A stretch of 63,515 nt of DNA, filler included, from Octopus bimaculoides (taxonomy: Eukaryota), in NCBI RefSeq assembly GCF_001194135.2. It is 5 parts of 4 records of this genome, joined end to end, with 100 filler letters (N's around TTAATTAATTAA, not from the genome) between each part and the next. Parts side by side here need not be neighbours in the genome. Positions count along the whole stretch, not along the records: positions 1 to 31,269 come from NC_068987.1; 4 more parts are not named here. One strand, written 5' to 3'. Within the stretch, counting starts at the first letter, position 1. Every line of letters begins with the position of its first letter. Positions 8,851-16,699 of this stretch are shown here, in pieces. The position numbers and the translations under genes are program-made. Below the pieces are notes generated by a model. It saw only the letters and a list, made by a program, of their open reading frames with translations. It had not been told where the DNA came from and did no database searches.

Positions 8851-10782
8851 AATGTTAAATGTTATATTAACCCTTTATTTACTCAAAAATGTACTTATAA
8901 TTTGATGATTATTTCTACTTCCAAGATTGTGATGTTGCTTACCTGAATTATATAATGTTTGCAATAATTTGTATGTATCAATGATCGTTTAGTTATACCA
9001 ATCAGTTTTTTACTCAAAAATGTTATTATAATGTCTCAGTATCATTATTGGTATATCTAAATGATATTATTTATATTGTTGTACACCTACATTGTATGAT
9101 CCCATAATTACTGATTTGTTAGGTACAGTTGTTTAGGTAAAGAGGAAGTGCCTATAGAAAGGACCGGCTTACGCTGGAGGAATGTTATAGCGTTAGTCGA
9201 AAATGGTTGGTAGAGTGACATGGAGAGATGCACATTGATGAGAGAAAAATGAGAGTCTCTTTAGAGAGATATATGTAAGTAAATACAGGTGTATGTACAT
9301 TAGTGTGAAATAAAAGGATATGTATGTATGTATAATGACTGCATGGGTCTGAAAACTGTTGTTTAACCTAATGCTAAGAAGTGAAAGGAATCGTCAATAG
9401 TGTGTATATAAACACGTGTGTGCATAAGTATGAATGTTTGTATTGTGTCTAAAGAATGTGTATAAATGTATGTATATCTATGGCAGTATATATATATATA
9501 TATATATATATATATNNNNNNNNNNNNNNNNNNNNNNNNNNNNNNNNNNNNNNNNNNNNNNNNNNNNNNNNNNNNNNNNNNNNNNNNNNNNNNNNNNNNN
9601 NNNNNNNNNNNNNNNNNNNNNNNNNNNNNNNNNNNNNNNNNNNNNNNNNNNNNNNNNNNNNNNNNNNNNNNNNNNNNNNNNNNNNNNNNNNNNNNNNNNN
9701 NNNNNNNNNNNNNNNNNNNNNNNNNNNNNNNNNNNNNNNNNNNNNNNNNNNNNNNNNNNNNNNNNNNNNNNNNNNNNNNNNNNNNNNNNNNNNNNNNNNN
9801 NNNNNNNNNNNNNNNNNNNNNNNNNNNNNNNNNNNNNNNNNNNNNNNNNNNNNNNNNNNNNNNNNNNNNNNNNNNNNNNNNNNNNNNNNNNNNNNNNNNN
9901 NNNNNNNNNNNNNNNNNNNNNNNNNNNNNNNNNNNNNNNNNNNNNNNNNNNNNNNNNNNNNNNNNNNNNNNNNNNNNNNNNNNNNNNNNNNNNNNNNNNN
10001 NNNNNNNNNNNNNNNNNNNNNNNNNNNNNNNNNNNNNNNNNNNNNNNNNNNNNNNNNNNNNNNNNNNNNNNNNNNNNNNNNNNNNNNNNNNNNNNNNNNN
10101 NNNNNNNNNNNNNNNNNNNNNNNNNNNNNNNNNNNNNNNNNNNNNNNNNNNNNNNNNNNNNNNNNNNNNNNNNNNNNNNNNNNNNNNNNNNNNNNNNNNN
10201 NNNNNNNNNNNNNNNNNNNNNNNNNNNNNNNNNNNNNTATAATACATTTCTAAATCTCTCAGAGAGATTTATGCAGTAGTGATGCGATAAAGTATTTGTA
10301 TGCTGTCAACTTAATGTGACAGTCCCATGAAGGGAAATAATACTATCCCTATTTACACTTAGGAAGCAGCACCGCTTCCTGTCGGCCATGACACATTTCC
10401 TGTGTCCTTATGTTTACAAGCGGGGAGATAAGTACCTTCACTTAGCTAAGCCTACACCCAGAGACATGTTTGTGAATCTTTGCTCGTTATCAGTCTGGAG
10501 TAGCAATGGCCTGCTAGTTGAAATCTTTATTACGATCACTACGGATCACACATAGATGAGGACAAACAATTACACAAAATGAATGAGATCGTGATTATAT
10601 ACAGTTTTTGGTTTTAACAATTATGTACAATTTAATAAATGAAATTAAAATTAATGAGAACTTGACAAAAATTTAGAGAACTTAAACTGATCCGTTTTGT
10701 GTTTTTCAAATTACACAGAAATTAGATTCTCCAACCGCGCAGCCTATAAGGCCCAGCAGATCACTTTTTATTTCTTCGATGG

Positions 10783-13768
10783 TTAATTTGGGCAACTAGC
10801 ACCCACCTTTTTCATCACTTTCTTCAGTCTTTGCTCATATACTCTTGCTGACAATGTCCTCTTACCAGCCTTATCTTGCTTTTTAGATGATATCTGAAGT
10901 AAACCAGCAAACCGGTGCCGGATATATAGGACCCTGTCACAAAACCTTCTATTCTTGTTCTCTATATGCACTCTTTCAACACTGCTACCGTACAGAGAAA
11001 ACAAGCCTCACCTTTCTTCGAGAGTCCAGTTGGCTGTATCATCTTTATTATAGATCCAGCCGACAGCTGTACTCGACCCAGATGCGACAACACGTAAATC
11101 ATCAAACCCGAAAGCTTCTGACAATGGACAAAAGCGTGCTGGACAGTTTCACTGTCCAGCTCACATCTTGGACATGACATGTCGGTGGCACTGCCATACT
11201 GTGCCTTGATAACTTATAACGAACAGGTAAAGCGTTCCTGTATCACTGCCAAGTCATGGATTTTTGGAAATTATCCAATATCCCGGCCTGAAAGTTTTTC
11301 GGAACAGGTCGGTAAGTTGGTTCTCATCGAACCCCAGAGCCCTTCCTAAGACGTCGTCATTTTTGCCTTCCACCAGCCCTCTATAGAATACCGAGGTGGT
11401 ATTTCTGCACACAGCCTTGCCCGTCTTGTGGATTAGCCAGTGTTCCTGATGGCACTGCTTCTGCCATAAAGTCAGATTACGCCTTTTAATGAAACCGGGT
11501 TTAAAACGATCCAGCGAGGCCGATCGCGGCAAGAACACCTCTGCCAGCGGACTCCACAACTTATCACCCTCCAGGTGGCACCAGAGATGTCTCAGCCTCA
11601 ACGCATGTCTGCGCATCATTAGTCAGGGCATCCCCAGACCACTCGTTAGCGATTCCTGGCAGCACACAGAGCGCCCCACAAGTGGCTTTCCTCCCTTCCA
11701 CAAAAAGCGGAATAGGAGTCTTTCCAGCTTGCTTAGCCAAGAATTGGGACAAGGCACAACGGACAGGTGATAGGTGATTACAGATGCTATAAACACCTGC
11801 ACCACCTCCGCTCTACCCTTCAAGGACAGAGACTTTCCGGACCACTTCCGTACTATGGCCTCCGCCTTGTTCAGTACCTCGCTCCAATTCTTCTCCGTCT
11901 GGAAGTCTGACCCGAACCAAACTCCAAGCAACTTAACAGGACCATCTGTCCAGTGTCCGACGACACTGGACAATATCGGCTAGTTCCTCCAGGTGCCGAG
12001 GCGCAAACCGATGGACTTGTCCTTGTTAATATTTGCTCCTTTTACCGCTTCGTATCGTCGGAAAGCATCTTCTACACGAGGTAGTTGTGTTAGTTGTGCT
12101 TCGTTAGACACGATGAGGGTGACGTCGTCCGCATACGCAGAAGTGAACTTACCACATCCAATCTCATTAGGGTTGCCACCTAACTTCTCCAGCCTCCACA
12201 GCAATGGCTCCAGGGCCAATACATACAGAATCGGAGACAAGGGACACCCTTGACGTACGAAAACGGCTCCGTTAGGTAACCGTTTATCTGGACGGTGGAC
12301 TTGATACCGCTATACATAGCAGAGATCCACCCGCGAAAGCCAGAGCCTAGCTCAGCCGCCTCGCGGACAGCCCCCAGGTACTGGTGTTCTACCCTATCGA
12401 ATGCTTTACTTTGGTCTAAATGGACCAATGCCCCTCCCTTGCCGGCTATTTTCCCTACCCTATCTAAGGTGTAGCGGATAAGATGAAGATTGTCCTGGAT
12501 CGACCTGCCTGGGATTGCACAAGTCTGTGCCTTCCCAACAAGCTTCCCCACAACAGCCGTCAACCTTTTTGTTAAACCTTGGCCAAAATCTTTAACTCTA
12601 CGTTAAGTAGAGTTATGGGCTGATAGTTGCTAATACCATCCCCCTTGCTTGGGTCTTTCTGGACCAGCGTCACTACTCTTCGGCTTACAGAGCTGGGAAT
12701 ACTCCCATTCTGCTGCGAGTTTCTATAGACGCCAGCCAGGACATCCCCAAACAAGTACGGCATTAAACGGTAAAACTCGTAGGGCAGACCATCCAGTCCC
12801 GGCGACTTTTCCCCAATGCACTCGGCCAGCACCTCTCTTACCTCCACGGGAATGATCGGCCCTTCACAGCATCCAGCTTCACTTGCCGAGAGTCGAGGCC
12901 CGCCAGCTAGGAAGTACCTTAAGGGCTCCCCGCGCTCAAGCGTACCGCTCTCCCCGAACAACTGAGCAAAATGCTGGTGAAAAGCCTTTCGCATCTCCCC
13001 CTGTCCATAGATTTTACGACCCTGTTCGTCAATTAAAGACTTAATACAGGACTTTTTGCCCTTCTGACTCTCCCCATGACGAGCCCATCTGGCTACGTTA
13101 ATACCTTCTCGTTTCCCAGCGCGTACCTTAGCTCTAACTCGGCACCCTTTTTGCTTGACATTGAGGTTACAGTACAAGACCGTTCTCGCCGCCAACACTC
13201 TAGGTGCTGAGCCAGATTCCATTGCCTCATCTAGGCTCTTAACTAAGTCACCCTCTATTCTAGTCCTATGTAAACTTAGCTGATCGCTAAATCTAATGGA
13301 CTCAAGACGGATGGCTCTCTTGAGGGCTAGCCACCATCTATTATTTAATGATGGTGCCACATAACGCCCTCTGAACTAACTCCTTAATCCGAGTACGGAA
13401 AGCATCACAGGCCAAAATAGACTTGTTCATTTTCCAATACATGGAGCCCTGTCTATAACACTTATCTACCTGTATCTCACATGTCATAAGTTTGTGATCC
13501 GTGTAAGGCACAATACAAAATTGTGGACAACTAAGACTATGCTTATATCTTTCCTTAACGAACATTCTGTCTATATACGATCTGCGTGAGCCGTCGGTGT
13601 TACTCCACGTCCACTGTGGAACGCTCGACTCATCCAGTCAGTAGCGGTCTACTAGATTATAGCTGTCTAGTAGACTCTTGAGGCATGGATTCCCTTTTCT
13701 ATTGGTGGAGCCTACACTATCGATGTGCTCATCAAGGATAGTGTTGAAGTCCCCTAACAAAACTACTG
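10783..13768 (-). pseudogene. LINE ORF2 (APE endonuclease C-terminal half, reverse transcriptase, C-terminal CCHC), frameshifted
   Basis: Motifs VVLLGDFNT, WTW...RSYIDR, YTDHK, KSPGLDGLPYEFY, ITLLNVELKILAK, LDQSKAFDRVEH, VRQGCPLSPILY, AYADDV and CPRC...ETVQHAFVHC are split over several ORFs in the track. Confidence 0.9.
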
Positions 13769-16219: not shown

Positions 16220-16699
16220 TTTTCAATTATGCAAAAATTTTCCGCTCCGAATGGCGAAAATAACAACAAACAGTTCACAGAAAAAAAAAACACAGTTGAC
16301 AATAATACAAGCAAAACACGAACTCACTCCGGCAGCAACAAAAAACGTCGAAACAAAAATCAAAGAGGGTATCCAAAGACAATGGCCTGCTAGTCGGAGA
16401 TGCCTGTCAAGCTCTCGTGAACATAATAATTTTAGTGAAACACATTCACTGATTTCAAAAATAGAAATAATACATTTCTACTCCAGACTGATGACGAGCA
16501 AAGACTCAGAAACATGTCTCTAGATGCAGGCTTAGCTAAGTGGAGGTGCTTGTCACCCCCTTGTAAACATAAGGACACAGGAAATGTGTCAAGGCCGACA
16601 GGAAGCGGTGCTGCTTCCTAGGGCTAAATAGCAGTAGTATTATTCCCGTCATGGGACTGTCACATTAAGTTGACAGCATACAACTACTTTATATATATA

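What the first reader, a model, noticed from the sequence alone, without database searches (positions are those of the whole stretch)
10287..16692. Composite element: Tx1-type LINE inserted into a long-TIR MITE, possibly a transposon-targeting retrotransposon
Seen: ~215-bp inverted repeats bracket a complete ORF1/ORF2 LINE. A perfect 15-bp direct repeat (caatggcctgctagt, 10504-10518 and 16380-16394) marks the LINE junctions. Removing the LINE restores a ~530-bp TIR element with an ~100-bp unique core, and the insertion point sits at the inner edge of the left TIR. Known: Tx1-clade LINEs often have sequence-specific APE endonucleases, and Xenopus Tx1L/Tx2L insert specifically into the non-autonomous DNA elements Tx1D/Tx2D. 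Inference: this may be an independent molluscan LINE/MITE host-target pair, and the intact TIRs could let the LINE be moved as cargo by cut-and-paste.
Basis: partly seen in the sequence, partly recalled or inferred. Interest (0 to 1): 0.82.

Follow-up and report, generated by a model that had tools for sequence, protein, structure and literature searches.

The report
Dead LINE nested in inverted-repeat element
A decayed L1/Tx1-type retrotransposon copy sits inside a 530-bp inverted-repeat element in what is probably an octopus genome; the nesting is real, but one copy cannot show that the retrotransposon aims at this element.

Summary
The geometry is real. Inverted-repeat arms of about 222 nt (10287-10508 and 16473-16692, 90% identical) bracket a minus-strand LINE (5' end 16379, 3' end 10519). 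The LINE is flanked by a perfect 15-nt target-site duplication, and excising it restores a 530-bp element.

The LINE is not complete:
- ORF2 needs 5 frame changes and carries about 7 in-frame stops.
- ORF1 is broken.
- At 13764 the endonuclease domain is cut at residue ~134 by an unrelated interspersed repeat (X).
- Both edges of the N gap lie in non-LINE sequence. Endonuclease residues 1-133 are unreadable on either side, so nothing can be read through the gap.

The domains (endonuclease, RT, zf-RVT, CCHC ORF1) and the relatives place it in the L1/Tx1 superfamily. The species is probably Octopus bimaculoides.

MITE targeting could not be tested, because no octopus genome was reachable. Relatives point both ways. 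Three sister families at 36-37% identity, all from one metagenome assembly, are strictly site-specific and form tandem arrays. The closest cephalopod relative with readable flanks (Argonauta, 51%) has a different AT-rich target, and SINEs carrying its 3' tail are dispersed.

I put ordinary nesting at about 0.6, targeting at about 0.3 and cargo mobilisation at about 0.03. Tx1 LINEs that target DNA transposons are already known from Xenopus and crocodilians.

The parts
10287..10508 (.). Left inverted-repeat arm of the host element (MITE-like or foldback)
   Evidence: 90% identical to the reverse complement of 16473-16692 over 222 nt; I1-I3
10504..10518 (.). Target-site duplication, copy next to the LINE 3' end (CAATGGCCTGCTAGT); 53% GC in a 38% GC window
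   Evidence: D10; GC values
10519..10787 (-). LINE 3' UTR; terminus ...CGTAATAAAGATTTCA without poly-A
   Evidence: ORF2 homology ends near 10785. The C-terminus was set by comparison with P0212. The 3' tail resembles the Argonauta tail.
10785..13766 (-). Decayed ORF2: last ~100 residues of the APE endonuclease, RT, and C-terminal zf-RVT-like CCHC region
   Evidence: Pfam RVT_1 3e-27, Exo_endo_phos profile positions 149-205 only, weak zf-RVT. Five frame changes and 7 in-frame stops. 53% identical to P0001 and 51% to Argonauta P0002.
13764..13987 (+). Interspersed repeat X, copy A, interrupting the endonuclease coding region at residue ~134
   Evidence: endonuclease homology stops at 13766
13988..14094 (.). 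107 nt of unassigned AT-rich sequence (31% GC): neither X nor endonuclease
14095..14535 (.). Assembly gap; could hold the missing ~400 nt that encode endonuclease residues 1-133, but this is not verifiable
   Evidence: The expected ORF1 end and ORF2 start (about 14740) come from the Argonauta ORF1 length.
14536..14760 (+). Interspersed repeat X, copy B, cut by the contig edge; 89% identical to copy A
14761..16219 (-). Decayed ORF1 (RRM-like region plus CCHC knuckle near 15430) and its lysine-rich tail
   Evidence: zf-CCHC 1.4e-5. Homologous to Argonauta ORF1 (27%, 9e-23) and to the ORF1 of the ERZ21867824 families (25-28%). One frameshift and one stop.
16220..16379 (-). LINE 5' UTR and 5' terminus (the copy was full-length or nearly so when it inserted)
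   Evidence: It abuts the TSD. Its length is comparable to the 5' UTRs of relatives.
16380..16394 (.). Target-site duplication, copy next to the LINE 5' end
   Evidence: D10
16395..16472 (.). Unique core of the host element (together with 10509-10518)
   Evidence: It lies between the TSD and the right arm.
16473..16692 (.). Right inverted-repeat arm of the host element

Best explanation
This is an ordinary nested transposon insertion that has since decayed. A full-length or nearly full-length LINE of the L1/Tx1 superfamily, in what is probably Octopus bimaculoides, integrated by target-primed reverse transcription. Its endonuclease nicked the bottom strand at 5'-CTAGT/CGGAG-3'. The second nick, 15 bp away, produced the 15-bp duplication.

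The target lay at the boundary between the inner arm and the core of a pre-existing 530-bp non-coding element with ~222-nt inverted arms. After insertion the copy accumulated frameshifts and stops. It was also hit by at least one, and probably two, insertions of an unrelated ~225-nt interspersed repeat (X).

Shown: the anatomy, the TSD, the domain content, the decay and the interruption.

Inferred: TPRT as the mechanism, which follows from the known biology of APE-type LINEs. That the choice of this host element was not directed is only the default reading. It is not demonstrated.
For: - IR arms and an exact 15-nt TSD sit at both LINE termini.
- The APE remnant, RT, zf-RVT and CCHC ORF1 are present.
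- ORF1 and ORF2 are both homologous to the same full-length relatives, so the two halves are one element type.
- Five frame changes and 7 stops show decay.
- X copies elsewhere in the window show that X is an independent repeat.
- Octopus genomes are 43-66% repeats, and O. vulgaris has 13 recently active L1-Tx1 families with 421 insertions, so nesting is expected often (PMC13282606).
- The closest relative with readable flanks (Argonauta hians, 51% aa identity) has a 17-nt TSD, TATTTTTAAAATTTGTA, in an AT-rich site that is not a MITE.
- 22 copies of the Argonauta 3' tail in 39 kb, mostly on ~250-nt SINE-like repeats, have diverse flanks. At least one LINE that recognises this tail therefore inserts dispersedly.
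- No second copy of the MITE or of the LINE occurs in the 31-kb window or in about 55 kb of other cephalopod loci.
Against: - Only one copy of this family could be examined, so randomness is assumed, not shown.
- The target 15-mer is 53% GC in a 38% GC window and is unlike the AT-rich sites of promiscuous L1-type endonucleases.
- Three sister families at 36-37% aa identity are strictly site-specific. One of them targets a short interspersed repeat.
- Many Tx1-clade families are target-specific (PMC4494074).
Confidence: 0.6

Rival explanations
1. Targeted insertion. This LINE family encodes a sequence-specific endonuclease that recognises a site in this inverted-repeat element family. It would be an octopus counterpart of Tx1L/Tx1D in Xenopus or of Tx1-Mar/Mariner-N4_AMi in crocodilians.
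For: - The superfamily is L1/Tx1-like.
- Three related families in ERZ21867824 always sit in the same sequence context and form head-to-tail arrays. One has a 17-nt TSD, TTAAGTTAACTCCAGCC, inside a ~230-250-nt interspersed repeat.
- Our copy is full-length, with a precise 15-nt TSD in a GC-rich site.
- Tx1 LINEs that target DNA transposons are documented (PMC1950540, PMC4494074).
Against: - There is a single observation, and the window was selected because of the nesting.
- The nearest relative with readable flanks (Argonauta) has a different target, and SINEs carrying its tail are dispersed.
- The ERZ target repeat has no homology to this element.
- The endonuclease hairpin loop is 9 residues, as in L1, not 11 as in Tx1L. 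This is a weak argument.
Confidence: 0.3
2. The host is not a single MITE. It is two independently inserted copies of one ~220-nt interspersed repeat (for example a SINE) in inverted orientation 88 nt apart, and the LINE landed at the edge of one of them.
For: - The arms are 90% identical, which is a typical distance between dispersed copies.
- The arm length is about that of SINE-size repeats such as X.
- SINEs make up about 11.6% of the O. vulgaris genome (PMC13282606).
- No clear TSD flanks the 530-bp unit. Only a TA is compatible, and just 49 nt of left flank exist before the gap at 9516-10237.
Against: - Both arms end at the same positions at both ends.
- The outermost 50 nt are the best conserved part, at 96% (I3), as expected for functional TIRs.
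- Rfam finds no tRNA, 5S or 7SL similarity in the arms.
Confidence: 0.15
3. Cargo mobilisation. The 6.4-kb composite is moved as a unit by a DNA transposase that acts on the outer TIRs.
For: Only that the outer 50 nt of the arms are 96% complementary.
Against: - No second composite copy is known.
- No transposase is identified.
- The LINE is decayed and interrupted in place, as expected for a static old insertion.
Confidence: 0.03

Closest known systems
Tx1L inserted in Tx1D (Xenopus laevis composite elements)
   Same: An APE-type LINE of the L1/Tx1 superfamily lies inside a non-autonomous TIR element and is flanked by a TSD. Tx1L is specific for a site within Tx1D (PMC1950540, PMC4494074).
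   Different: Specificity in Xenopus is shown by many copies and by endonuclease assays. Here there is one decayed copy. The host here is a 530-bp long-TIR element of unknown superfamily, not a piggyBac-type element with internal tandem repeats. The endonuclease hairpin loop is 9 residues here against 11 in Tx1L.
Tx1-Mar LINEs targeting Mariner-N4_AMi in crocodilians (Kojima 2015, PMC4494074)
   Same: This is a Tx1-group LINE found in a DNA-transposon-derived element. A TA TSD for the host here would be compatible with a Tc1/mariner-type MITE.
   Different: Target preference in crocodilians rests on dozens of flanks. It was not testable here.
Three LINE families in ENA assembly ERZ21867824 (P0134/P0009, P0148/P0012, P0019)
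   Same: ORF2 is 36-37% identical and ORF1 is homologous. They share the architecture, have a 3' end with AATAAA and no poly-A tail, and have 17-nt-class TSDs.
   Different: They are intact, multicopy, strictly site-specific and arranged in head-to-tail arrays. Their targets are unrelated to this element, and the one target characterised has no TIRs.
Argonauta hians LINE at L002:6886-12650 (protein P0002)
   Same: It is the closest relative with readable flanks: 51% aa identity, homologous ORF1, similar 3' tail and a 17-nt TSD.
   Different: It sits in an AT-rich, microsatellite-flanked site. Its 3' tail is shared by abundant dispersed SINE-like repeats.

Membership tests
APE-type non-LTR retrotransposon, L1/Tx1 superfamily | Reverse transcriptase domain of LINE type | tested here: met
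   RVT_1 E 3.3e-27; 145 homologues with E<=0.001, the best 120 listed at up to 53% identity
APE-type non-LTR retrotransposon, L1/Tx1 superfamily | N-terminal apurinic-like endonuclease domain in ORF2 | tested here: inconclusive
   Only the C-terminal third is readable: Pfam profile positions 149-205 at E 0.004, and tblastn to relatives' endonuclease from residue 134 at 1e-27. Residues 1-133 are absent or lie in the gap.
APE-type non-LTR retrotransposon, L1/Tx1 superfamily | C-terminal Cys/His zinc-binding motif (zf-RVT) and an ORF1 with a CCHC knuckle | tested here: met
   zf-RVT is weak in the decayed copy (E 0.005) but is present in relatives' precomputed Pfam annotation. zf-CCHC E 1.4e-5.
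APE-type non-LTR retrotransposon, L1/Tx1 superfamily | Target-site duplication at both termini | tested here: met
   Perfect 15-nt TSD
Tx1 clade in the strict sense | RT-domain phylogeny groups it with Tx1L, Keno, Kibi and Koshi rather than with L1 | not testable with these tools
   No Tx1 reference sequences or names were retrievable. The only support is by elimination: L1-Tx1 is the L1-superfamily type reported in molluscs (PMC10294476, PMC13282606).
Tx1L/Tx1D-type host-target pair (LINE specific for a DNA transposon) | Many independent copies of the LINE at the same position in the same element family | not testable with these tools
   Only one copy was available. No other copy is in the window. 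The family is multicopy in O. bimaculoides: two UniProt entries are about 81% identical to the ORF2 C-terminus.
Tx1L/Tx1D-type host-target pair (LINE specific for a DNA transposon) | Relatives of the LINE show target specificity | tested here: inconclusive
   Yes for three ERZ21867824 families. For the Argonauta relative the single copy has an unrelated target, and its 3' tail occurs on dispersed SINE-like repeats.
MITE (miniature inverted-repeat transposable element) | Terminal inverted repeats, small size, no coding capacity | tested here: met
   222-nt arms at 90% identity, 530 bp after excision of the LINE. The restored 530 bp was not translated separately; one search lists no ORF of 80 aa or more lying within it.
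MITE (miniature inverted-repeat transposable element) | Constant target-site duplication flanking the TIRs | tested here: inconclusive
   Only a TA is compatible (GCGA-TA-AAGTA... and ...TACTT-TA-TATAT). The left flank is only 49 nt before a gap.
MITE (miniature inverted-repeat transposable element) | Multiple dispersed copies in the genome | not testable with these tools
   No other copy in the window, in L002, L019 or L020, or in JGI metagenome contigs

The most novel reading that the evidence does not exclude
This LINE family is a cephalopod lineage of Tx1-like retrotransposons whose endonuclease is specific for a site at the arm/core boundary of a long-TIR MITE family. That would be an independent molluscan LINE/DNA-transposon host-target pair.
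Probability: 0.3. Interest if true: 0.5.

Novelty: new member of a known kind. Interest (0 to 1): 0.27.

Why it matters
As it stands this is a routine nested-repeat structure in a repeat-rich genome, useful mainly for repeat annotation. If targeting were confirmed, it would add a mollusc example to the short list of LINEs that home into DNA transposons: Tx1L/Tx1D in Xenopus and Tx1-Mar in crocodilians. It would also supply a new endonuclease/target pair for studying how APE-type endonucleases acquire sequence specificity. The site-specific, array-forming sister families seen in ERZ21867824 are better material for that question, because they are intact and multicopy.

Tried and rejected
- Target as a small RNA gene. 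An Rfam scan of the whole window at E<=1 found nothing in the host element or the LINE, so the target is not an snRNA, tRNA or 5S gene.
- Other copies in the window. blastn of the arms, LINE ends and LINE body against the window found only self hits.
- Close LINE copies through the protein database. The full ORF2 query gave at most 53% identity. The C-terminal query found only O. bimaculoides UniProt entries with no DNA on record. A profile query found Logan, O. sinensis and Argonauta relatives at no more than 57% identity. The Logan contigs are one locus seen in several runs.
- Window ORF in other assemblies. An exact look-up of the 262-aa window ORF, tried in order to fill the gap, found nothing on record.
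- Arms in metagenomes. A scan of JGI metagenome contigs for a 22-mer conserved in both arms gave 0 hits.
- Cluster names for classification. None were informative.
- Homology between this host element and the target repeat of the site-specific ERZ family. The short shared motifs (CATCTC.G, ACTCCAG, CAGACTGA) proved to be chance, with no significant alignment.
- X copies A and B as one repeat assembled twice (overlapping contig ends). Rejected, because they are only 89% identical and their right flanks differ.
- A 14-nt direct repeat ATAATACATTTCTA (10239-10252 and 16467-16480) as a sign of a second element copy. The sequences diverge immediately after it, so I treat it as chance (D15).
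Full report
**Observation.**
Two inverted arms, 10287-10508 and 16473-16692, align over 222 nt at 90% identity (blastn E 9e-83). The repeat finder splits them into three collinear pieces of 87-96% (I1-I3), and the outermost 50 nt are the best conserved at 96%.

A perfect 15-nt direct repeat, CAATGGCCTGCTAGT, lies at 10504-10518 and 16380-16394 (D10; read). 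It cannot be extended by one base on either side. Deleting 10519-16394 leaves 232 + 298 = 530 bp, with the arms separated by about 88 nt. Arms this long and this similar cannot be a chance match. A 15-mer placed exactly at both ends of a retroelement body is the expected signature of target-primed reverse transcription.

**The gap, tested first.**
The LINE lies on the minus strand, with its 5' end at 16379 and its 3' end at 10519. Coming from the 3' side, homology to relatives' ORF2 runs from about 10785 up to 13766, where it stops at endonuclease residue ~134 (tblastn with four full-length relatives).

From 13764 the sequence is a different repeat, X (13764-13987). It is followed by 107 nt of AT-rich sequence (13988-14094) that is neither X nor endonuclease, and then by the N run. 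On the far side, the contig starts at 14536 with a second copy of X (14536-14760, 89% identical to the first). Only at 14761 does LINE sequence resume, as the ORF1 tail.

X occurs twice more in the window, at 18749-18939 on the minus strand and at 18352-18546, so it is an independent interspersed repeat. The two sides of the gap are therefore not continuous LINE sequence, and no frame can be carried across. The roughly 400 nt encoding endonuclease residues 1-133 are found nowhere in the window.

A consistent but unverifiable model follows from the Argonauta ORF1, which has about 230 residues after its zinc knuckle. That places the end of our ORF1 at about 14740, right at the boundary of X copy B. 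On this model X hit the LINE twice, and the missing endonuclease part lies in the gap.

**State of the LINE.**
It is not 'complete'.
- ORF2 needs five frame changes between 13766 and 10785 and has seven in-frame stops within the tblastn segments.
- Comparison with the O. bimaculoides protein P0212 shows one further frame change near the C-terminus.
- ORF1 has a frameshift, a stop and no upstream ATG.
- Pfam finds RVT_1 (3.3e-27), the last third of Exo_endo_phos, a weak zf-RVT match, and zf-CCHC in ORF1.

Both halves belong to one element type. Our ORF1 is homologous to the ORF1 that precedes ORF2 in the Argonauta element (27%, 9e-23) and in three other families (25-28%). The 5' UTR of about 160 nt abuts the TSD, so the copy was full-length or nearly so when it inserted.

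**Identity.**
The only close database match is a pair of Octopus bimaculoides UniProt entries, A0A0L8HND8 and A0A0L8FMY2. The first is 81% identical to our ORF2 C-terminus, and the second clusters with it at 90% or more. The species is therefore probably O. bimaculoides, and the family has other copies there.

The best ORF2 relatives are P0001 (53%, an unannotated assembly) and an Argonauta hians protein (51%). After them comes a large set of 1,145-1,161-residue proteins at 35-41%. A full-length relative, P0003, matches human L1 ORF2p over endonuclease plus RT at 1e-72, against 1e-29 for R2 proteins.

Mollusc repeat surveys list L1-Tx1 as the L1-superfamily type present, ubiquitous across molluscs and part of the old coleoid complement (PMC10294476, PMC8967140). 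O. vulgaris has 13 recently active L1-Tx1 families (PMC13282606). 'Tx1-type' is therefore reasonable. Formal placement by an RT tree was not possible, because no reference Tx1 sequences or names could be retrieved.

**Is the insertion targeted?**
The decisive test is to compare the flanks of other copies, and it could not be run. There are no other copies in the window, no DNA on record for the O. bimaculoides proteins, no match for a window ORF in other assemblies, and no hit for an arm 22-mer in metagenome contigs. I therefore looked at relatives.

*Relatives that are site-specific.* Protein P0134 (37% identical to ours) occurs at ten places in ENA assembly ERZ21867824. Nearly every copy has the same context:
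...GAATATTCATCTCGGTG[TTAAGTTAACTCCAGCC]-LINE-[TTAAGTTAACTCCAGCC]TAACACTTTGGCAGTCAGACTGA...
- Flank homology extends for about 77 nt upstream and about 130-150 nt downstream.
- An uninterrupted copy of the target lies at L010:633-792.
- The elements form head-to-tail arrays of period 6,388 nt.
- Two further families from the same sample (P0148, P0019) also form arrays, with periods of about 6,848 and 6,595 nt by self-alignment. The sequence after their 3' ends recurs at the array ends.

These behave as strictly target-specific LINEs, and one of them targets a short interspersed repeat. That target has no TIRs and no homology to our host element.

*The closest relative with readable flanks points the other way.* The Argonauta element (L002:6886-12650) has a perfect 17-nt TSD, TATTTTTAAAATTTGTA, in an AT-rich, microsatellite-flanked site. 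Its 25-nt 3' tail, GGCCCTTGTGGCTAATA(A/G)AGAAATC, occurs 22 times in 39 kb of Argonauta sequence, mostly on ~250-nt SINE-like repeats. The downstream flanks share only TAT(T/A). At least one LINE that recognises this tail therefore inserts dispersedly.

*Our own site.* The bottom-strand nick site, 5'-CTAGT/CGGAG-3', is comparatively GC-rich: the TSD is 53% GC and the window 38%. That is mildly unlike a promiscuous AT-preferring endonuclease.

**Weighing.**
Nesting is expected to be common in a genome that is 43-66% repeats (PMC13282606), and this window was selected because of the nesting. I put ordinary undirected nesting at about 0.6 and true targeting at about 0.3.

I also keep about 0.15 for the possibility that the host is two inverted copies of one SINE-size repeat rather than a single MITE. 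That question concerns the host and overlaps the other two readings. No clear TSD flanks the unit, only a compatible TA, and only 49 nt of left flank exist before the gap at 9516-10237.

Nothing supports cargo mobilisation (about 0.03). The LINE has decayed and been interrupted in place.

**Comparison with what is known.**
Tx1L is specific for the non-autonomous DNA transposon Tx1D (PMC1950540). Kojima (PMC4494074) further showed that crocodilian Tx1-Mar families target Mariner-N4_AMi, that other Tx1 families target LTR elements, and that many Tx1 lineages are target-specific.

One small structural note concerns the endonuclease hairpin loop that shapes target choice in L1-type endonucleases. 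It is 9 residues long in our copy (T-WSNTDGSRR-S, read by hand) and in P0003. That matches human L1 rather than the 11 residues of the grafted Tx1L loop. This is weak evidence either way.

**Verdict.**
This is a real, correctly delimited nested structure. Its 'complete LINE' description is wrong, and its targeting hypothesis is plausible but untested. Interest is low to moderate.

Noticed in passing
L003-L012, L021-L025 (ENA ERZ21867824): Three related, intact LINE families (ORF2 of 1,153-1,161 aa) occur as head-to-tail tandem arrays with periods of about 6.4-6.8 kb. Each always lies in the same sequence context. One has a 17-nt TSD, TTAAGTTAACTCCAGCC, inside a ~230-250-nt interspersed repeat without TIRs. 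The host organism of this assembly is unknown.
   Followed up: partly
L002 and L019 (Argonauta hians): The 25-nt 3' tail of the Argonauta LINE (GGCCCTTGTGGCTAATA(A/G)AGAAATC) is shared by abundant ~250-nt repeats: 22 tails in 39 kb. These are probably partner SINEs. The downstream flanks nearly always begin TAT(T/A) and are otherwise diverse.
   Followed up: partly
window 13764-13987, 14536-14760, 18749-18939 (-), 18352-18546: An interspersed repeat X of about 225 nt has four copies in 31 kb. Two copies in the same orientation flank the assembly gap inside the LINE. Its class is not determined, and Rfam finds no match.
   Followed up: partly
L007:7180-7325: A ~144-nt insert with a tRNA-like start (GGCGGGCACCTCTGGTGGTGTAACGGTTAGC...) sits exactly at the LINE/target junction of one ERZ copy. 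It may be a SINE using the same target site.
   Followed up: no
window 10239-10252 and 16467-16480: A perfect 14-nt direct repeat, ATAATACATTTCTA. One copy lies just outside the left arm, next to the contig edge, and the other at the inner boundary of the right arm. The sequences diverge immediately afterwards, so it is probably chance.
   Followed up: partly
window 9516-10237, 14095-14535, 18552-18661 and others: Six N gaps in 31 kb, several of them next to repeats. The scaffold is built from contigs of about 4 kb, so the order and spacing around the composite rest on scaffolding only.
   Followed up: no
L002:12014-12144 and 12421-12553: The 3' UTR of the Argonauta LINE contains an internal duplication of about 130 nt, with the copies spaced ~407 nt apart at 78-81% identity.
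   Followed up: no
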